This document shows, piece after piece, positions 27,227-39,117 of a DNA stretch of 64,000 nucleotides (the stretch's first letter is position 1; every line of letters starts with the position of its first letter). The stretch is taken from assembly GCA_047495785.1 (NCBI GenBank), contig JBLDXI010000017.1, positions 2,542,001 through 2,606,000 of the forward strand. Reading direction: 5' to 3'. This stretch comes from Lepidodermella squamata. Its lineage: Eukaryota > Animalia > Gastrotricha. The translations under genes were made by a program, and so were the position numbers. The notes under the pieces are model-generated. The model worked only from the letters and a program-made list of their open reading frames with translations, searched no databases and was not told the DNA's origin.

Positions 27227-28377
27227 ATGTCGCAAAAAGAGTCTATCAAGGTATGCGTCACCGGTGCTGCTGGACAAATCGCCTACTCGCTGGTTGGACT
27301 TATCGCCAGCGGGCAAGTCTTTGGCCCAGACCAGCCGATCGACCTGCATTTGCTCGATATTGAACCGATGATGGGCGTTCTTAATGGCTTGGTTATGGAG
27401 CTTGATGATACTGCCGTGCCTCTCATCCGCAGCGTTGTTGCTACTCATGATGTAAATGTCGCCTTCAAGGATATTGATTATGCATTCCTTGTCGGTGCCA
27501 TGCCGCGCAAGGTAAGTACAAGTTCAGAAATAAGTCCCAACTTAATTTTGCAATTCATGGTTCTTTCTTTCAGGAAGGTATGGAACGCAAGGATTTGCTG
27601 GCCGCCAACGTCAAAATCTTCAAGGCTCAAGGCCAGGCTATTGATACCGTCGCCAAGAAGACCGTCAAGATTCTCGTAGTTGGAAACCCTGCCAATACCA
27701 ACGCTTTTATCTGCCGCCACTTTGCACCATCGATCCCCGCTGAAAACTTCTCCGCTCTGACTCGCTTGGATCATAATCGCGCCGTCGCGCAAGTCGCCAA
27801 GAAACTCGGTGTTTGCCCATCGGCTGTATACAATGTTGCTATCTGGGGCAACCACTCCAATACTCAAGTACCGGACCTGCGCCGTGCCAAGATTGTCCGT
27901 AAAGCTCTCGAGGGAAAGGTTGCCCCTGGCAACGACGATGTTTCGGCTGCTGAAGCCATCAAGGATGACAACTGGGTTAAAACTGTTTTCGTTCCCACTG
28001 TTCGCGCTCGTGGCGCTGCTGTTATCGCTGCCCGCAAGTTGTCGTCTGCCATGTCGGCTGCCAAGGTGAGGTCTTTAGTAAAATTAAGAAATAATTGCTT
28101 AACTTCGTAAAAACAGGCCTCGGCTGACCACATGCATGATTGGCATTTCGGCACTGCTCCGGGCAAAACTGTTTCAATGGCTGTGGTGTCTGATGGCTCA
28201 TACGGCATCCCACAGGGACTGGTTTACTCATTTCCCGTAACCATTGCCAACGGAAAATGGAGCATTGTTCAAGGATTGACCATTGACGACGAATTGCGCG
28301 CCGCTCTGGATGCTTCGACCAAAGAGCTGTCGGAAGAGCGCGTTCAGGCTATTGAGGTCTGCAGTGCTGCCAACTGA
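27227..28377 (+). CDS. MDH1: Cytosolic malate dehydrogenase (345 aa, 3 exons)
   Basis: Exons 27227-27511, 27574-28065, 28117-28377. Motifs [57 protein letters not shown] are all canonical. Confidence 0.96.
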
Positions 28378-28763: not shown

Positions 28764-30885
28764 ATGTTGACCAAAGCATTGACTAGGATAACGCCGTCAA
28801 TGAAGGCACCGGTTCGCAGGATCGTTCATTCTGCCGCATTGTCACAGAAGAAGCTTTGCTCAGCACCGTTTCCAGAATTCGACAATGACCCGGAGTTCAC
28901 ATCATATGACCAGCTCTATGAATATAGCATTAAGAAACCTGACCTATTCTGGGATCGATTGGCAAAGAGTCGGCTCACCTGGAAAAAACCTTACTCGAAA
29001 GTTCTTTCATCTTCCGCAATGACCGGCGAACGATTCGGATGGTTCGTCGACGGAACCCTAAACGCATCTGTCAATTGTTTGGACCGCCACGTGGCTGTTC
29101 AACCTAATCGAGTCGCTCTAATCGAAGAAAAAGACGACGGATCGTCGTCAGAAGTCACCTATAAGGCATTGCTAGATCAAGTGTGCCAGATCGCTAATAT
29201 GCTGAAGGCACATGGCGTGAAAAAGGGTCAAAATGTTGCGCTTTTCATGCCAAATTCCGTATCATTAGTCGCTACGATGCTGGCGTGCGCTCGAATCGGA
29301 GCTGTCCACTCAGTTATGTTTGCCGGGTTCAGCCCAGACGCATTAGCTGCTCGTTTGATCGACTCTGAATCTTGCATTGTTGTGACTACGGATCAAGTTG
29401 TTCGAGGCGGTCGAACTATTGAAATGAAAAAGGTGTTGGATGCCGCCTTACAAAAATGCCCTTTCGTGAAAAATGTTTTTGTGTCTAATCGGACTGGCTT
29501 AGGTGCCCCAAATGCAACTATGACCGCGAAAGACATTCATTTCGAGCAAGAGCTCGCTAAATACCCGACCACCTGCGAACCGGCTGAGATGAACAGCGAG
29601 GACCCATTATTTATTCTATATACCTCTGGCAGTACTGGCCGTGTTAAGGGAGCTGTTCATACTCATGCCGGTTACCTCCTTTACGCAGCCGTGACTCATC
29701 AACTTGTTTTCAATTACCAGCCTGGCGAACGTTTTGGCTGTGTCGCAGAGTTGGGCTGGATAACAGGCCACTCTTACATAGTTTACGGGCCTCTAATGAA
29801 CGGCGGTACATCACTGCTGTTCGAGAGCCAACCGGCCTACCCTAATCCAGGAAGATATTGGGAAATGGTCGGACGATTGCAACTAAACCACATATATCTC
29901 ACCCCCACTTCTCTACGTTTGTTGTTGAAACACGGTGATTCCTGGGTGCAGAAACATAACCGATCCAGCTTGAAAACGATCGGTTGTGTTGGCGAGCCTT
30001 TGAATCGTGAAGCTTGGCAGTGGGCTTACGAGGTTGTTGGCAACGAGAAGTGCGACGTTATCGACACATGGTGGCAGACGGAGACCGGTGGAATCTGCAT
30101 CTCGCCGCGGCCGTCGCCCGTCGGAGCCCCGATCCACCCATCCACTGCTGGTCGGCCGTTTTTCGGCATCCACCCGGTCCTAGTCGACGGTAATGGCAAG
30201 GAGATTGAGAAGGACGGCGAGAAGGGTAATTTATGCATGAAAATTCCATGGCCGGGCATGGCGCGAACTCTGTACGGTGACCACGAGCGATTCTTCCGAA
30301 ACTGCTTCGACAAATTCCGCGGCTATTACACAACGGGTGATGCCGCTAGAATCGGTGAACATGGCCAGTACCAGATAATTGGCCGAACTGATAACGTTAT
30401 AAACACGTCCGGCCATCGCATCGGAACTGCTGAGGTCGAGGATGCCATCGATACGCACCCTGCAATCGCCGAATCAGCCGTTGTTGGTTTCCCGCATGAT
30501 ATCAAAGGCGAGGGCATTTACGCCTTCATCATCCTACGCGATCGTCAAGCCGTGGGTGGAGCGGCCATCGACAAGCTGAGTGTCATCGATACCATCAAGC
30601 GACAGGTCAGAAACAAAATTGCCGGTTACGCTGTGCCAGACGTTGTTCATGTGAGTTTGAAAAAAATCCACCTTAATAATTTTTTTAATGCGGATTTTTT
30701 TGTTTTAGATTGCGACGAATTTGCCGAAAACCCGAACGGGTAAAATAGACCGGCGCGTTTTGCGTAAAATAGCTAGTGGAGCTAAGGATATTTCGCATGT
30801 TGGCGACACTTCGTCGCTTACCAATTCTTCGCTTGCTGTCATTGACGTTCTGATCAAGCGACGGGCTGAGCTTGTAGGAATGTAA
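28764..30885 (+). CDS. ACSS1: Acetyl-CoA synthetase, mitochondrial type (ACSS1-like, ~687 aa, 2 exons)
   Basis: Exons 28764-30650 and 30709-30885. Basic N-terminal presequence, YTSGSTG, GWITGHSY, DTWWQTETGG, SGHRIGTAEVE, LPKTRTGKI. Confidence 0.88.
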
Positions 30886-32059: not shown

Positions 32060-33192
32060 ATGTCGAGAAAAGAAGTAATTAAAGTTTGCATTACCGGGGC
32101 TTCGGGCCAGGTAGCCTACTCCTTAATCAGCCTCATTGCCCATGGGCAAGTCTTTGGAAATGACCAGCCTATTGATCTTCACTTACTGGGCACGGAGCGT
32201 AGAATCAGCGTTTTGAACGGATTGGTGATGGAACTTGAGGATACTGGCTCGCCTTTGATTCGCGAAGTCATAGCCACTAGCGATGCCAATGTAGCGTTCA
32301 AAGATATAGACTACGCGATACTAGCTGCTACCATACCTTGCAAGGTAATTTTCCGAGTCCTATCAAAATCTCTAAGTTCCATGAGTTTATAGGAAGGGGC
32401 ACCGCGTAGTTATTATCTTTCGTCCACAGCCAAGATTCTCAAAGCACACGGTCAGGTCCTTGATGCCGTTGCGAAAAAGAGCGTCAAGGTGCTGGTAATG
32501 AGCAATCCGACGAACACAAACGCTTTTATTTGCCGTCACTTTGCTCCTTCCATACCGGCTGAGAACTTCTCCGCTCTAACTCGCTTGGACCATAATCGAG
32601 CCGTTGTGCATGTCGCGAAGAAACTAGGTGTTTCTACTTCTGCCGTCTACAACGTGGCCGTCTGGGGCAATCATTCAAGTACTCAGGTTCCGGATCTTCG
32701 CCGTGCTAAGATTAGCCGCCAAGCTCTGGCTGGTGAATTCGCCTCTGGAGGGGATGACGTGTCTGCGGCTGATGCCATCAATGACGAAAATTGGGTCAGA
32801 AACGAGTTTATTCCCACTGTTCGAGAAAGAGGCAATCATATTTTCGCAATTCGAAAATTGCCTTCCGTGCTATCTGCTGCTAAGGTTTGCGGTTCACCCA
32901 AGATGGAACATTATAAAATTCTTTTTTTCAGGCGGCAGCGGACCATTTGCGTGATTGGCATCTCGGCACGGCGCCCGGGAGGTTTGTTTCGATGGCTGTT
33001 GCATCCGACGGATCTTATGGAATACCTGAAGGCCTGATTTATTCTTTCCCTGTAACCATTGAGAATGGCAAGTGGAGCATTGTTCAGGACCTGGTCATCG
33101 ATGACGATCTGCGCTTAGCTCTTGACATCTCGACGAAAGAGTTGCTAGAAGAAAGAGATTTCGCGCTGGCAGCTTGCGAAGAGACCGCTTGA
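32060..33192 (+). CDS. Divergent tandem paralog of cytosolic MDH1 (345 aa); 2-hydroxyacid dehydrogenase of uncertain specificity
   Basis: Exons 32060-32344, 32393-32884, 32932-33192 have the same lengths and phases as MDH1. Catalytic TRLDHNRA and WGNHS retained; cofactor and substrate loops altered. Confidence 0.92.
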
Positions 33193-33342: not shown

Positions 33343-36300
33343 TCACCGTCTCGCTAGATTATGAGTTTCATACTGTAGCCACTGATCTGGAACTTCGAGA
33401 AAAAAATTGCGCATCGCATTGATGAAGCGATCACGATATTGATTTGGCGCAACGATGGTGGGTGTACCCTGTCTGCCCAGGAGACCGCTTGATTTTACCA
33501 CGGATTCGACCTTCTTATCCCAAGTGAAAGTTCGCAAGTAGTCGATGATGCCAATCACTATTCCATGGCCTTGGGGATCGAGACCTACAAGAAGGCTGTA
33601 GTCCATAACCTTGTTGTCAGCTAGAAATTGAGTGTCGGAAGCTATTGCTTGAAGCAGAAGTTTCTTAGAATGCGGATACACGTAAAGAGGGTCTTGCAGG
33701 CTCCGAATCAGAAGGTTTTCGTCCAGCAGTACGATGTCGCCATGTTCTGGCGTGGTGTCAGTGAATTCCTGCGCCGGCTCAGACAAGTCACCGTTGGATA
33801 GGGCGATCAAAGACGATGAGCTGCTCCCACTTGGAGGTTTTGTAGAAGGCCCAACATTTTTTACCAAGCGGTTACGCTGCGATCCTTTCAGGTCGAACTT
33901 CTCCGAAATGACGTAGTTCCGGAACAGATATTCCATGATAATAACATCGTACTTGAAACTATGGCCACTGATATTGCTTTCAACACCTATGTGGAAGACG
34001 CCAAAGATAGGAACTAGCGCAGAAGGTCTCTGAAAAACCTCAATTAATGATTTCAAGTCTAATAGTAGTTTTATTACCTTTTTGTCTCTCGATTCTTTGA
34101 CGTGCTCAAGGTATGCGGGAGCCATATCGAAAACGGTCTGAAGTTCCGTTTTTTGCAGCTGTTTAAGAACAAATCTTCGATCCAAGGTTCTGAAGTACTT
34201 GACGCCCGACTTGCCACCAGCTGCAAGCCATGACTTGCAACGGCGCAGCGATTGGACGAACCCAAACTCATTGAATAAGTCCTCATTGCTATCGGCTGAT
34301 GGCAGGAGAATAGCACGGATTTCGGCGAAGACCGCCGCATGGTAAGCAGTGACCGTGAATTTAGTCCCAGACTCCTTATCTAACGATGCATTGCACCACT
34401 CGACGGTAATGTGACGAGGGTCGTCTCTGATTTCCTGTTTCTTCCCACTATAACGTGGAGATTTCATGGGAGGTCTTAAATAAGCTCCTCCGACTCTGAG
34501 CTCAACTTTGGGCGAATCAGGTGGCTCCAACGAGCTGTTACCATCTTCAGCTGTAGCTACAGAGGGCGGCTGCGAATTAGCTTGGCTGTCGATTAGGGCC
34601 TTGTCAAAATCGAAGTTGATCACGCTGCTGGAATCAGAACTGCCATCAGATTCATTCATTTCAGCCTCCTCAGCGCATTCGGCTAACACGCGATTATCAC
34701 TAGACCTCTTCGACGCATGGCTTTCATTCGGCAATTCCGGCTGATTCACTGATAACGAAGCCGATCTACTGAGTAAGCCAAAGCTACTCATCGATATTGT
34801 TGACCCATCGCCCAGTTGGTCTGACAACTTTTGCTGATACTGTTCGGTTGAGAGGAAGAATGCGATTAGTGAACTGGGCTCTTCGTTGATAACTGCTACA
34901 GGGCTAACAAGCTGCTGGCTTCGAAATACGTAATGATGACCCGCTGGGAATGGCTGCTCAAGCGGTAATTTCAGTTTGCTCTTGAACAAAGGATGTTGCA
35001 GCATGTCTGCGTCGGTCAGAAATTCAAGAAGACCTCGAGCAAATGAAGTTCGATGCTCCATTCGCTTACTAGAAGGCGTATCTGGTGGATGGTTTCTCGA
35101 ATCTGGCGGTGGCATAGCTAGTTGGGGGGTGAAGACATCACTGGCATAGCTGGATACCAAATCAGATGACATCGCCTGGTTAGAAGTTATGTTCGGGCTA
35201 GTGTTAAGAGATGCGCTAGGAATCGGTCGAATGGCAATGGGGATCGATACTTTCCCGTCACCTGACGAGCTAAGATGAGGCTCGCTTGCTGCAGATACAG
35301 CCTCAGCACGGATGAAGTGAATGAACGCTTTCAGTGTTTCGTTCCAGTCGAACCAAGATTGATAGATATTTTGACACAGCGCCAAACCTGCATCTTCGCA
35401 GTCACGATTCGTCGACACGGATGCTGCCAGTTCAAGCTGGTTAACTTTTTCTACAAAATTCCCAACTTCGATAGTCAAATCATTTTCAAGAACCGCGAAC
35501 TGTTCCACTATCGATTTACTCGGAGTCCCAGGTAGCAGAGCATGCAGATTGTTCTTCAGATTTTCAAGATATAGAGCCACAGCGTCATAGTAAGAAGTCG
35601 CAATTTTGACCATAGTTGCCCCGTCTGGAGTCTGGGTCAGGAGCCGGTGTTGGAAATTACTGGCGCTCGTCGTTTTCAAATCAGCTAATTGCGGCTTAGG
35701 AATAACGATGTCCAAAACATCGATAGGTGAATACTTGAAGACAGCAACGATTTTTTCTTTAGCGAAGAACTGTAAATAGTTCTTTTCGAAAGAATGGGGG
35801 CAGCGCCTTGAACCAGTGAGCGTAACACATGTGTGATCGATTCCGTCGAATTTGCGCTGCAAGAAGCAGGCGAAAGACATTTCCCAAAGTGCATTCGGGT
35901 CCGGCCGATGCAGCGGTGTAACGGCGTTACATTGGCGGCACATGGACCACATGACAACAGCGTCATGAGGAGCAGAAATAGGTTGGGAAATCGCTCTTAC
36001 AATAACATCGACTCGACCGCAGTTACTAGCGAATCTGCGGACATGATCCGTATTAGCCGCTCCACATCCAGGACGCGAGCAGATAATACTCGGCATGAAG
36101 CAGATTTCGTCCAGAAATGCTCCGAGGCTATGATCAGGTGGCGTGTAAAGTGACCAAGATTCTGACGAAGGGCCGTAGCAAAAATGGTATGGGGAAGTGT
36201 GCGAATCAGGCGAAAAAACACTGACAAGGACCTGTAAACTCTGGCATTCTGCAAAGGACAATGGTTTCGCCCAGATTGCCTTAGAAATCCTTGGGTTTTT

Positions 36301-39117
36301 CGTCGTCACGCTTAGCGACACATTTTCTGACAACGTTGCTGTTAGTTTTCGAGATTTATCCTCGATTTCATAAAGCGATCCATCGCGCTTGAAGTCAGCA
36401 ATCATCCTGGCGAATTCCTCCGATTTGAGCTCGTGGACAAGTGGCGTTTTGAAGAAATCGTGAATTGGACGCTCAATGCTTACAGACGTCCAAAGCGGTG
36501 GCTTTGAATCGCAAGTCTCAGGCCGATTTCCCTGGTTGTAGCTCGCAGTCAGTAATGAGAAAATTGACGACTCGAAGTAAATGCGAGAGGGGCTGGCGTC
36601 GAACGATGCGGATTTTTTCGATGGATCTGGGAAACGTATCAAAGGGCATAATGCTAGTAGCCCTGAATTCGTGAGAGTAAACGCCGCATCTATCGTGGTC
36701 ATCGAAGTCCGTCGCTGCGATGAAACAGGCAAGGAAGGAGTTATCATCTGAGCTGCGGATCCCAGCGCAAGTTTCCGCCGATGCCGAATAAGCTGCACCA
36801 AGTTGAACGCTGCCGAGTCTCGATGGCCAGAGAAAGACCTTCGGCTTGCGATTATCTGCCGGCGATTGATGGCAGCCGTATTTGGGTACTCGTCCTCGTC
36901 AGGAGACAAGACATTCGGGTCATCGGAGGGTGACTTCGGGGAGGAAACCCAGGCGACTTCGAGCGAAAAGGGGTCAGCTCGAAATGCCGCCATGTACCGT
37001 GACATGACTTGGCCGTCATGGGCGACTGCAATTAGCCATCGAAGAATTTTCTTCACCTTAACTAGGTCGGAATAGCAGCTGTCCCGGATTAGAAGGGTAC
37101 ATCCTATTGGATCACAGCCCGACAGGCAGATGAAAGTTCTTTGAAGGCGAGTATGCTCATGGATGCAAAATGAAGCGAAAGTTCGGCAATTGCCGAGTCG
37201 TGCAGAGGATTGGCTGACACTTGACAACGTCAAACTGTCCACGGATTGGAATATCATGGCACCGGTGCATCGTGAAATCGCCTCCAGCAAGTGCGGCTTT
37301 ACGTAGGAAGCAGCTGAAATGTCATTAGCCAGCAAATTTTTACACGCAAGAGTTGGTATGGACCCTCCACACAGCACCAAAGTTGGTTTGAGGATCGCAA
37401 TCTGCGACACGTAGCGCTGCATTTGTTCGTATTCTTGGTCGACAACGATATCCAGGGTCGTTAGCTGTTCCGACTCCCGTTCAAATTCTAACCCACTTTC
37501 CAGTAAAAGAATTCGCGGCTTATGAATCGAACGTTTCATTAAGCGATGGCTCAGCGTTTTGGTGAAAACTAGGCCGTCAACGTACTCGAATTGAGCGGTC
37601 AAGTTCGGTTCGTAAATTTTCTTTATCTTAACGCACCGTCTTATGTCCAACATATCCGGGTAGTCGTGAGGTCGAGGCTTGAGGTTGCGAGCGACTTGAT
37701 AGACAATTTGCAGCATGTTCCGCTGCCATTTTTCAGCATCCAGCTGCTCGACGGAGAGCAAATGGGAGCAAAGGCGGGCGAGATGTACCTTGTACAACCG
37801 CTGGAGAGTTTTTTCAACATCAGACGCTCGGTAAATTCCGGAAATTATGTCGGACGGAGTTTGCCGGCCTAAAAGTTGCGACAAGCTTTTCAAGATAGCC
37901 TGATCGATTTCTTTTGTCAACTGCTGGCCAACTGCTTTGTTGCTAACTACTTGTTTTGATCCAGAGAAACTGCTTAGGTTTTCGAAAATTTGCTCCGAAT
38001 TTTGACGCTTGAAACTGCCAAGCGCCTCTTTTGGATTCTCGGGAATAGCCGAAATGTCCACGTCTTTCAATGACAGGGGCGTAGGAGGCGGCGTTGCTGA
38101 GTAAGACCCAATCACAGGTTTGAATTCAGGGGCAGAGGCAGCCGAATATCTCTCAGAATCGTCGAGTGGAATAGATGATGGTGGAATCGCTTTCCGTGTT
38201 GGCGATGACACTTCTGGCATGAAATTTGGAGTTTCGCTGCGGTTTGAATGAGTTAAATGCAGTGGTGATAGTGGCGAAGTAGTGCCAAGCGTTTGAGTGG
38301 GCGACTGATCTGAACTTCCCCCGATTGCAACGTACAGCGAGGCCAGACGCTGCAGAACATCTTCGGCTATCAGAGTGGCGTGCTCTTCCAAGAGAACGCG
38401 CAGTGTCTGTCGGTAACAAACCTCACACGCTCGCAAGCCATCTATAAACAAAACGGAAAAATGTCAACAGGGAAGTGAGGAAAAGCTAGGACAATAATGA
38501 ATCCACCCTAAAATGTCTAATTATAAAAATTGCTTACAATCGACACCGAACGGCTGGCCAGGTATGCGCCACCTGGTACACGAATCACAGAAGATCCGGC
38601 CGCAAAATCGGCAATGATGGCGGCGGGTGAAAGTCGTGAACCGAACGGAACAATCATAGCAGTGGTAACAGGTATCATCACTAGCCCAAATAGCGTTCAG
38701 GCCAATAATAGGGGTGAGCTGCTGTCCTTTACGCACGAACAGCGACGTGAACTGTTGACGATAAGTCGGTGATCTTGTTCGTGACGAGAGCGAATCAAGT
38801 TCAGCACTACTAGCAGGCTGGGAAATCGCTACCGATTGACTGCGTTTGACCGGTTGCTTGTCGCTAGATGCCACCGCCTCATTTTGCAGCACTGTCGCTG
38901 ATGACGAGCTAGGTACCAGTGTATTTTCCCTTCTCCGAAAGGCTTGACTAACGCTTGAAAAAATGCTATCGAAAAAGAGTGATGCTGTTGTATTGCGCTG
39001 CCTCGAATCCGGCTCGTTTCTCGGGTGGGGCCCGAATGATGTCAACGTATTCGGATCGAAACTAATTGGTGGCAAGGGAAGCGGTTTAGCCTCATCAGCC
39101 TCCTCACCAATCATCAT
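33343..39117 (-). CDS. PIKFYVE: PI3P 5-kinase PIKfyve/Fab1, copy 1 (~1,876 aa, no recognisable DEP domain)
   Basis: Exons 39117-38538, 38441-34078, 34029-33343. FYVE (WASDD..RRHHCRFCG), CCT/TCP1-like domain, Cys-rich region and kinase motifs GGKSG, VLKQ, DLKGS, MDYSLL, IIDYLR. Confidence 0.93.

What the first reader, a model, noticed from the sequence alone, without database searches (positions are those of the whole stretch)
32320..32884. The same MDH paralog has a remodelled substrate site (specificity Arg to Cys)
Mobile loop [19 protein letters not shown] becomes [19 protein letters not shown] (TGC at 32339-32341); VGNPAN becomes MSNPTN; [16 protein letters not shown] becomes [16 protein letters not shown]. 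The catalytic Asp/His and carboxylate-binding Arg are kept, and changes cluster on the active site while the scaffold is conserved. Loss of this Arg is how LDH activity arose from cytosolic MDH in trichomonads. Inference: a new 2-oxoacid reductase (pyruvate or larger substrates).
Basis: partly seen in the sequence, partly recalled or inferred. Interest (0 to 1): 0.8.

Follow-up and report, generated by a model that had tools for sequence, protein, structure and literature searches.

The report
Malate enzyme copy with rebuilt pocket
A small invertebrate carries, 5 kb from its normal cytosolic malate dehydrogenase gene, a transcribed and selectively maintained copy whose substrate and cofactor pockets have been rebuilt, so it probably acts on a different 2-oxoacid with NADPH, though no activity has been measured.

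Summary
The finding lies in a three-exon gene (32060-33192, + strand), here called MDH1b. Its specificity arginine is cysteine (TGC 32339-32341). The other quoted changes are real too.

It has the same length and intron positions.

- **Origin:** MDH1b is a lineage-specific duplicate. It carries 74-75 private residue changes against 4-6 in MDH1a.
- **Still maintained:** the reading frame is open and synonymous sites are saturated while dN is 0.20. Strain differences run 6 silent to 2 replacing. RNA contigs show intron 2 spliced out.
- **Where the changes fall:** 18 of 23 hits on near-invariant columns lie in active-site segments. R109, N140, D168, R171 and H195 (LDH numbering) are kept.
- **Engineering parallel:** six of the seven positions changed to turn E. 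coli MDH into an NADPH-dependent 2-oxo-4-hydroxybutyrate reductase are also changed here, three identically.

The best reading is an NADPH-preferring 2-oxoacid reductase that no longer prefers oxaloacetate. The substrate is unknown, and no orthologue was found.

This scan had already noted this gene for its cofactor loop (s1-410335). It also noted a similar mitochondrial-MDH case elsewhere in the genome (s1-374019).

The parts
32060..32344 (+). MDH1b exon 1 (95 codons): Rossmann fold, cofactor loop, first half of the specificity loop
   Evidence: Translation. Pfam Ldh_1_N. Aligns to pig and human MDH1 residues 2-91.
32183..32203 (+). Cofactor 2'-selectivity loop LLGTERR, which reads LLDIEPM in MDH1a
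   Evidence: The best solved-structure hit of exon 1 is 1wze, a Thermus MDH with the loop LLGSERSFQAL. Exon 1 scores slightly higher than MDH1a on the NADP-type model TIGR01757 and 31 bits lower on the NAD-type model TIGR01758.
32339..32341 (+). TGC, the Cys that replaces the substrate-specificity Arg (pig Arg91, LDH numbering Arg102, E. coli Arg81)
   Evidence: MDH1a has CGC at the same codon, so the difference is one transition. Contigs of runs X1 and X2 list no difference at this codon.
32345..32392 (+). Intron 1 (48 nt, GT..AG, phase 0), at the same position as intron 1 of MDH1a
32393..32884 (+). MDH1b exon 2 (164 codons). It holds the second half of the loop (32393-32440), the Asn130 strand MSNPTN (32495-32515), Asp158/Arg161 (32588-32599), His186 (32672-32674) and helix alpha2[17 protein letters not shown] (32828-32878).
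32885..32931 (+). Intron 2 (47 nt), removed in RNA
   Evidence: Loose ends of run X2 contigs at 32885 and 32930 spell the exon 2-exon 3 junction.
32932..33192 (+). MDH1b exon 3 (86 codons plus stop): C-terminal scaffold, with no change at a column conserved in canonical MDH1
   Evidence: Its TIGR01758 score equals that of MDH1a exon 3 (102.7 against 102.5 bits).
27227..28377 (+). MDH1a, the canonical sister gene. Exons are 27227-27511, 27574-28065 and 28117-28377.
   Evidence: tblastn. Sequence and translations. It is 79-88% identical to database proteins P0270 and P0272.

Best explanation
MDH1b is a lineage-specific duplicate of the animal's cytosolic malate dehydrogenase gene. It has kept the fold, the dimer scaffold and the hydride-transfer machinery: the His-Asp pair, Arg109, Arg171 and Asn140 in LDH numbering.

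Both binding pockets have been rebuilt. The arginine that grips the C4 carboxylate of oxaloacetate is now cysteine. The lid loop and the helix that packs on it carry many new residues. The acidic residue that selects NAD is replaced by a Gly-Thr-Glu-Arg-Arg loop of the NADP type.

The most likely function is an NADPH-preferring L-2-hydroxyacid dehydrogenase (2-oxoacid reductase). It would act on a substrate without a second carboxylate and would no longer prefer oxaloacetate.

**Shown:** the sequence changes, the duplication and its asymmetry, transcription with splicing, and purifying selection.

**Inferred:** catalytic competence, NADPH preference, and the class of substrate.
For: **Duplicate origin.**
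- Both genes have 345 codons, no indel between them, and the same two intron positions.
- MDH1b is sister to MDH1a in the exon 1 tree (SH-aLRT 95) and the exon 2 tree (90/84).
- It shares the clade's 9-residue insertion.

**Asymmetry.** MDH1b has 74-75 private changes against 4-6 in MDH1a (p about 1e-15).

**Constraint.**
- pS is 0.75 (saturated) while dN is 0.20.
- By relative rates against P0270 and P0272, dN is about 0.17 on the b branch and about 0.02 on the a branch. That gives omega of roughly 0.2 on b.
- Placing the observed differences at random keeps the frame open in 1 of 20000 draws.
- Listed strain differences in the coding sequence are 6 synonymous and 2 replacing.

**Expression.** Contigs of run X2 cover the gene, skip the upstream intergenic DNA, and spell the exon 2-exon 3 junction.

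**Targeted remodelling.**
- 18 of 23 hits on columns at least 95% conserved lie in active-site segments.
- Residues new to the family are 26 of 35 inside those segments and 11 of 57 outside.
- Exon 3 keeps its full family score.
- The catalytic segment LTRLDHNRA is unchanged.

**Parallel with engineering.** E. coli Mdh was made an NADPH-dependent 2-oxo-4-hydroxybutyrate reductase by I12V, R81A, M85Q, D86S and G179D plus D34G and I35R; I35T and other position-35 variants were also tested (PMC11882521). By alignment A2, MDH1b has I18V, D44G and I45T (identical changes) and R94C, M98A and E99P (same positions).

**Role of the Arg.** Arg81/102 binds the C4 carboxylate and underlies a 10^6-fold discrimination (PMC11461317). 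All known MDHs have it (PMC4109310).
Against: - No enzyme assay exists.
- Replacing Arg102 alone gave poor enzymes in E. coli MDH (10,000-fold lower kcat/KM) and no highly specific LDH in an ancestral MDH (PMC4109310).
- 21 private changes at near-invariant positions, including two new prolines (E99P, S252P), could equally mark loss of catalysis.
- Keeping five catalytic residues is only weak evidence when 20% of conserved columns have changed.
- RNA depth over MDH1b is low, about 2-18. A spike of about 1100 sits where MDH1a RNA probably cross-maps.
- No orthologue was found, so long-term conservation of the Cys cannot be tested.
- Synonymous saturation prevents separating positive selection from relaxed constraint.
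- The active-site segments for the Fisher test were set from textbook knowledge after I had seen the data.
Confidence: 0.6

Rival explanations
1. Pseudoenzyme or regulatory partner. MDH1b keeps the fold and is maintained for a non-catalytic role, for example as a heterodimer partner of MDH1a or as a nucleotide or metabolite binder. Catalysis is lost or vestigial.
For: - 23 of 105 near-invariant family positions are changed, mostly around the active site.
- RNA level is low.
- Purifying selection is equally expected for a structural role.
- Single Arg102 replacements cripple other MDHs.
Against: - All catalytic residues and the whole LTRLDHNRA segment are intact.
- The cofactor loop changed to a specific NADP-type motif rather than drifting.
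- Six of the seven positions that engineers used to make an active NADPH-dependent 2-oxoacid reductase are hit, three identically.
Confidence: 0.17
2. Still a malate dehydrogenase, possibly NADP-linked. Other residues would compensate for the missing Arg.
For: - Arg97(109), Arg161(171) and Ser241 remain.
- The closest families by profile are MDH families.
- NADP-MDHs with the same cofactor loop exist in plants.
Against: - Arg is invariant in 98 of 98 canonical MDH1 and in all known MDHs (PMC4109310).
- Its loss costs thousands-fold in oxaloacetate activity.
- No new basic residue appears in the loop. It gains Ala, Pro, Ser, Tyr and Tyr.
Confidence: 0.1
3. A specific L-lactate dehydrogenase, that is, a further independent origin of LDH from MDH as in trichomonads. 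This is a narrower version of the best explanation.
For: - Loss of Arg102 is shared with all four known MDH-derived LDH lineages.
- The change from VGNPAN to MSNPTN creates the Ser-Asn-Pro string that I recall from canonical LDHs. That is from my own knowledge and was not tested.
Against: - Cys at position 102 is not among the known LDH solutions, which are Gln, Lys/Trp107f, Gly and Leu.
- The profile score against protist LDH is far below its cut-off.
- An NADPH-type loop is unusual for fermentative LDH.
- The same genome has another candidate, a mitochondrial-MDH duplicate (s1-374019; not tested).
Confidence: 0.15
4. A decaying duplicate under relaxed selection that has not yet been disabled.
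For: - About a 15-fold excess of changes on the b branch.
- Losses at invariant sites.
- Low RNA depth.
- GC3 is lower than in MDH1a (0.49 against 0.56).
Against: - Synonymous sites are saturated but dN is only 0.20.
- There is no indel or stop in 345 codons, and both introns keep GT..AG.
- The frame stays open in 1 of 20000 random draws.
- Strain differences are 6 synonymous to 2 replacing. By my own hand calculation, the binomial P is about 0.003 if 76% of changes are expected to be replacing.
- Scaffold changes stay within the family's observed range.
Confidence: 0.06

Closest known systems
Trichomonad L-lactate dehydrogenase, derived from cytosolic-type MDH (Wu and Fiser 1999, as cited in PMC4109310; PDB 4uum)
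   Same: It arose by a recent duplication of a cytosolic-type MDH. The specificity Arg is replaced by an uncharged residue, and the catalytic residues are kept.
   Different: It has Leu, not Cys. It is from a protist, not an animal. I know of no cofactor-loop switch in the trichomonad enzyme. MDH1b changes many more loop and alpha2G residues. The trichomonad activity was measured, while MDH1b's was not. The TIGR01756 exon scores sum to about 214 bits against a cut-off of 486.
Trypanosoma cruzi aromatic alpha-hydroxyacid dehydrogenase (Cazzulo Franke et al. 1999, cited in PMC11461325)
   Same: It belongs to the cytosolic MDH group, has no MDH activity, and acts on other 2-oxoacids.
   Different: It is NAD-linked and from a protist. 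I did not obtain its sequence, so no residue-level comparison was made.
Engineered E. coli Mdh 5Q/7Q, an NAD(P)H-dependent 2-oxo-4-hydroxybutyrate reductase (PMC11882521)
   Same: Six of its seven engineered positions are changed in MDH1b. I to V, D to G and I to T are identical changes. The Arg, Met and Asp/Glu of the loop are replaced at the same sites.
   Different: It is artificial and built on the E. coli (mitochondrial-type) scaffold. It has Ala/Gln/Ser where MDH1b has Cys/Ala/Pro. G179D has no counterpart here. MDH1b has about 15 further private active-site changes.
Chloroplast NADP-MDH (1civ, 7mdh) and the Thermus MDH entry 1wze
   Same: They share the Gly-Ser/Thr-Glu-Arg-Ser/Arg cofactor loop at the end of beta-2.
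   Different: Those enzymes keep Arg102 and are malate dehydrogenases. From my own knowledge, the plant enzymes also carry redox-regulatory N- and C-terminal extensions. MDH1b has no extensions: it has 345 codons, like MDH1a.
Canonical animal MDH1, represented by MDH1a in this window and by human and pig MDH1 (7rm9, 5mdh)
   Same: Fold, length, intron positions, catalytic residues and C-terminal domain are the same. Identity to MDH1a is 70.7%.
   Different: Arg91 is Cys, Asp41 is Gly, and there are 21 private changes at near-invariant columns.

Membership tests
LDH/MDH superfamily (Pfam Ldh_1_N + Ldh_1_C) | Both domains are detected above the gathering score. | tested here: met
   Ldh_1_N scores 42.6 bits on exon 1. 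Ldh_1_C scores 62.1 bits on exon 2 and 40.7 bits on exon 3.
LDH/MDH superfamily | Catalytic His195-Asp168 pair, Arg109, Arg171 and Asn140 (LDH numbering). | tested here: met
   His186, Asp158, Arg97, Arg161 and Asn130 of pig MDH1 all align to identical residues. Their codons were checked.
Eukaryotic cytosolic NAD-MDH (NCBIfam TIGR01758, equivalog) | Whole-protein score above the curated cut-off of 470.4 bits. | tested here: inconclusive
   Only exon-wise scores are possible. MDH1b scores 97.0 + 183.1 + 102.7 = 382.8. MDH1a scores 127.8 + 221.4 + 102.5 = 451.7. Full-length P0270 scores 500.3. MDH1b is 69 bits below its sister, so it is probably below the cut-off.
Malate dehydrogenase (any class) | Arg at position 102 (LDH numbering), which binds the C4 carboxylate. 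[quoted passage not shown] | tested here: not met
   Cys, TGC at 32339-32341. Arg is present in 98 of 98 canonical MDH1.
NAD-dependent MDH1 | Acidic residue at the end of beta-2 (pig Asp41) that selects NAD. | tested here: not met
   Gly is at this site, in the loop LLGTERR. Asp is present in 98% of canonical sequences.
Chloroplast-type NADP-MDH (TIGR01757) | Score above 598.3 bits, Arg102, and regulatory terminal extensions. | tested here: not met
   Exon scores sum to about 255 bits. Arg102 is absent. There are no extensions: 345 codons, as in MDH1a. Only the cofactor-loop motif is shared.
Protist MDH-derived LDH (TIGR01756) | Score above 486.25 bits. | tested here: not met
   47.5 + 111.2 + 55.1 = 213.8 bits. 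This is lower than MDH1a's 244.7.
Canonical L-LDH (TIGR01771) | Score above 303.55 bits and Gln102. | tested here: not met
   19 bits on exon 2 only. Position 102 is Cys.
Functional 2-oxoacid reductase other than MDH (works-like claim) | Measured NAD(P)H-dependent reduction of a 2-oxoacid other than oxaloacetate. | not testable with these tools
   This needs recombinant protein and kinetics.

The most novel reading that the evidence does not exclude
MDH1b is a natural counterpart of the engineered NADPH-dependent 2-oxo-4-hydroxybutyrate reductase. It would reduce an uncharged C4 2-oxoacid, with Cys as a new kind of specificity residue.

That would point to a homoserine-derived side pathway in an animal.

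It would also be the first metazoan case of a cytosolic MDH switching both substrate and cofactor.
Probability: 0.07. Interest if true: 0.85.

Novelty: new variant of a known kind. Interest (0 to 1): 0.55.

Why it matters
Published work counts four independent origins of LDH from MDH, all outside animals (PMC4109310). It treats position 102 as the key specificity switch, one that is strongly dependent on the rest of the protein.

Here both genes sit 5 kb apart, and the parent copy has hardly changed since the duplication. That makes a clean natural experiment:
- about 75 substitutions, all on one branch;
- a dual substrate and cofactor switch;
- close overlap with positions that protein engineers chose independently.

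If the protein is active, it would give a new specificity residue (Cys). It would also be a metazoan example of MDH neofunctionalisation, and a ready-made pair for swap experiments on epistasis. If it is inactive, it is a well-defined pseudoenzyme derived from a core metabolic enzyme.

Tried and rejected
**Orthologue searches. All came back empty.**
- Word search with exon 2 found at best 55-58% identity, all canonical.
- The exhaustive search of 1.84 billion representatives found at best 54%.
- A word search with the length band widened found P0270-P0273 at 63-65%, all with canonical Asp41 and Arg91. For this I used the open frame 32393-33037 and scored only residues 1-164.
- JGI metagenome contigs gave two loci at 46%.
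- A synteny attempt through the neighbouring acetyl-CoA synthetase found at best 57%, from spiralian animals.

**Tests that failed or could not be run.**
- A prior-free clustering test, using nearest-neighbour distance among changed conserved columns, was not significant (P 0.47). Conserved columns are themselves clustered, so I replaced it with segment tests.
- A branch-site or dN/dS test for positive selection is not feasible, because pS is 0.75-0.82 in every pair that includes MDH1b.

**Explanations considered and rejected.**
- *Older duplication.* Four-fold sites make MDH1a look closer to P0272 than to MDH1b. I judged an older duplication less likely than shared codon bias among highly expressed orthologues. 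Several a+b-only residues (IDLH, PLIR, GLVMEL, RRAK) and the trees for exons 1 and 2 support sisterhood. Exon 3 is unresolved.
- *Gene conversion.* Only 32513-32632 shows raised third-position identity, 0.50-0.65.
- *Assembly error at the Cys codon.* No difference is listed there in X1 or X2 contigs.
- *Membership in ciliary MDH1B.* E-values are only 1e-10 to 1e-7.

**Organism.** I did not confirm its identity.

- In one search, exon letters were pooled inside a script, only to count GC3.

Full report
**1. What is at the coordinates**

The finding lies in a three-exon gene on the + strand, which I call MDH1b.
- Exon 1 is 32060-32344.
- Intron 1 is 32345-32392 (GT..AG).
- Exon 2 is 32393-32884.
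- Intron 2 is 32885-32931.
- Exon 3 is 32932-33192.

The exons carry Pfam Ldh_1_N and Ldh_1_C. They match eukaryotic cytosolic MDH best among NCBIfam models. Human and pig MDH1 are the best solved structures for exon 2; exon 1's best hit is given in section 6.

TGC sits at 32339-32341. By the alignments to pig MDH1 it replaces Arg91, which is Arg102 in LDH numbering. Arg97, Asn130, Asp158, Arg161, His186 and Ser241 are kept.

**2. The comparison sequence is in the same window**

A tblastn search of the window found a second MDH1 gene 5 kb upstream on the same strand. I call it MDH1a. Its exons are 27227-27511, 27574-28065 and 28117-28377.

Both genes have 345 codons, no indel between them, and introns at the same two codon positions. 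An acetyl-CoA synthetase gene lies between them. The two proteins differ at 101 of 345 residues.

**3. Origin**

The closest database proteins are P0270-P0273, from transcript-sized contigs of environmental and other runs.
- They are 63-65% identical to MDH1b exon 2.
- P0270 and P0272, the two compared, are 79-88% identical to MDH1a.
- All four are canonical at Arg91, and the three that cover the cofactor loop have Asp41.
- They share a 9-residue insertion with both window genes.

Trees were built exon by exon.
- MDH1b is sister to MDH1a for exon 1 (SH-aLRT 95) and exon 2 (bootstrap 90, SH-aLRT 84).
- For exon 3 it sits just outside MDH1a plus P0270, P0272 and P0273, with weak support.
- End branches are 0.46-0.68 for MDH1b against 0-0.11 for MDH1a.

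With P0270, P0272 or P0273 as outgroup, 74-75 changes are private to MDH1b and 4-6 to MDH1a (p about 1e-15). This is a lineage-specific duplication followed by strongly one-sided change.

No orthologue of MDH1b turned up in any collection I could search.

**4. Is it alive?**

- *Divergence.* Synonymous sites between the two copies are saturated (pS 0.75), while dN is 0.20. Relative rates against P0270 and P0272 put about 0.17 of that dN on the MDH1b branch and 0.02 on the MDH1a branch. With a four-fold-site distance of about 1.3 between the copies, omega on the b branch is roughly 0.2. That is raised about eight-fold over MDH1a, yet far below 1.
- *Open frame.* Placing the observed nucleotide differences at random leaves all three exons open in 1 of 20000 draws.
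- *Strain differences.* A second strain or haplotype (run X1) differs in the coding sequence at eight listed places, six of them synonymous. The two replacing changes, His to Gln and Val to Ile at 32611-32612, are adjacent. The Gln matches MDH1a; the Ile does not.
- *Transcription.* Contigs of run X2 (2015) cover the gene at low depth. They leave the upstream intergenic DNA uncovered. Their loose ends at 32885 and 32930 spell the exon 2-exon 3 junction, so the gene is transcribed and intron 2 is removed. Removal of intron 1 was not shown.
- *Depth spike.* A spike at 32521-32637 coincides with the stretch that is 83-87% identical to MDH1a. It probably comes from MDH1a RNA.

**5. Where the changes fall**

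I compared both genes with 98 full-length canonical MDH1 sequences. MDH1b has changed 23 of the 105 columns that are at least 95% conserved. MDH1a has changed 2, both shared with MDH1b.

Eighteen of the 23 lie in seven textbook active-site segments (Fisher p 0.002).

| Segment | MDH1a | MDH1b |
|---|---|---|
| Glycine-rich turn | GAAGQIA | GASGQVA |
| 2'-selectivity loop | DIEPMMG | GTERRIS |
| Specificity loop, 15 of 24 residues changed | | |
| Asn130 strand | VVGNPAN | VMSNPTN |
| Helix alpha2G | [16 protein letters not shown] | [16 protein letters not shown] |

The two catalytic segments are untouched apart from one variable site.

Inside the segments, 26 of 35 MDH1b residues are never seen in the 98 sequences. 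Outside them the figure is 11 of 57 (p 2e-7).

Exon 3 has no change at a conserved column and keeps the same TIGR01758 score as MDH1a. Exons 1 and 2 lose 31 and 38 bits.

A prior-free clustering test was not significant. The segment definitions were mine and were set after I had seen the data.

**6. What the changes mean**

- *The lost Arg.* The Arg binds the C4 carboxylate of oxaloacetate and underlies a 10^6-fold discrimination against pyruvate (PMC11461317). All known MDHs have it. The four known MDH-derived LDH lineages replaced or displaced it, with Leu in trichomonads (PMC4109310). Oxaloacetate preference is therefore very unlikely to survive.
- *The cofactor loop.* It now reads Gly-Thr-Glu-Arg-Arg. 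The best solved-structure match of exon 1 is 1wze, a Thermus MDH with Gly-Ser-Glu-Arg-Ser at this site. From memory, this entry is the variant engineered to use NADPH; I did not check that. Exon 1 scores slightly higher than MDH1a on the plant NADP-MDH model.
- *The engineering parallel.* An E. coli MDH was turned into a 2-oxo-4-hydroxybutyrate reductase by I12V, R81A, M85Q, D86S and G179D. It was then made NADPH-dependent by D34G with I35R; I35T and other position-35 variants gave at least 2.5-fold higher activity with NADPH (PMC11882521).
- *How MDH1b matches it.* Aligning E. coli mdh shows I18V, D44G and I45T, which are identical changes, and R94C, M98A and E99P at the same positions. That is six of seven engineered positions.
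- *A caution.* Single replacements of Arg102 often give poor enzymes, and their effects depend strongly on the rest of the protein.

**7. Verdict**

The best reading (0.6) is a maintained, transcribed MDH1 duplicate turned into an NADPH-preferring 2-oxoacid reductase for a substrate without a second carboxylate. Which substrate is unknown.

Rival readings:
- a maintained pseudoenzyme or partner subunit (0.17);
- a residual, perhaps NADP-linked, MDH (0.10);
- a decaying copy (0.06).

A specific LDH is a narrower form of the best reading, which I put at about 0.15.

**8. Relation to earlier notes of this scan**

- The same gene was already followed up for its cofactor loop, with the same overall reading (s1-410335). 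I re-derived that loop evidence independently.
- A mitochondrial-MDH duplicate with an LDH-like switch is noted elsewhere in the genome (s1-374019). I did not test it.
- The organism label, a gastrotrich that is probably Lepidodermella squamata, comes from note s1-430069. I did not verify it. The acetyl-CoA synthetase neighbour is closest to spiralian animals.

**9. Left out by rule**

The three exons were never joined for any search or fold, so every search was exon by exon and by reference. No structure model of the full protein was made, and residue roles rest on sequence alignment to solved MDH1 structures.

Noticed in passing
window 27227-28377 (+): A canonical cytosolic MDH1 gene (MDH1a) with the same exon structure as the finding's gene. 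It has barely changed since the duplication, with an end branch of 0-0.11.
   Followed up: yes
window 28764-about 30885 (+): A mitochondrial-type acetyl-CoA synthetase (ACSS1-like) gene lies between the two MDH1 genes. It has the domains ACAS_N, AMP-binding and AMP-binding_C. Its best relatives are spiralian animals at 53-57% identity. It appears to have a short last exon after an intron near 30700.
   Followed up: partly
window 33343-38451 (-): A single 1702-codon open frame carries a TCP-1/cpn60-like domain and a PIP5K kinase domain, which is a PIKfyve/Fab1-type architecture. It converges on the 3' end of MDH1b and is covered by run X2 contigs.
   Followed up: partly
window 32611-32612: Run X1 reads Gln-Ile where the window has His-Val in MDH1b. 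One of MDH1b's changes at a 96%-conserved column (Gln168His) is therefore not fixed between strains.
   Followed up: partly
window 32521-32637: Run X2 depth jumps to about 1100, against 2-18 elsewhere in the gene. This is exactly where MDH1b is 83-87% identical to MDH1a. It is probably cross-mapping of abundant MDH1a RNA, and possibly a small gene-conversion tract.
   Followed up: partly
P0122 (locus L005, NCBI GCA_013339745.2), P0151, P0201, P0140: Other MDH1-like proteins lack the specificity Arg. P0122, from an animal genome assembly, has Ile; P0151 has Asn and also Lys for Arg97; P0201 has His; and P0140, a plant-like fragment, has Cys. Loss of this Arg in MDH1 duplicates may recur across eukaryotes.
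   Followed up: no
L001-L004 (ENA metagenome scaffolds, GROS21-1): Eukaryotic scaffolds of 10-43 kb in environmental metagenomes carry a canonical MDH1 (P0001). Its intron is at a different position from the window's genes.
   Followed up: no
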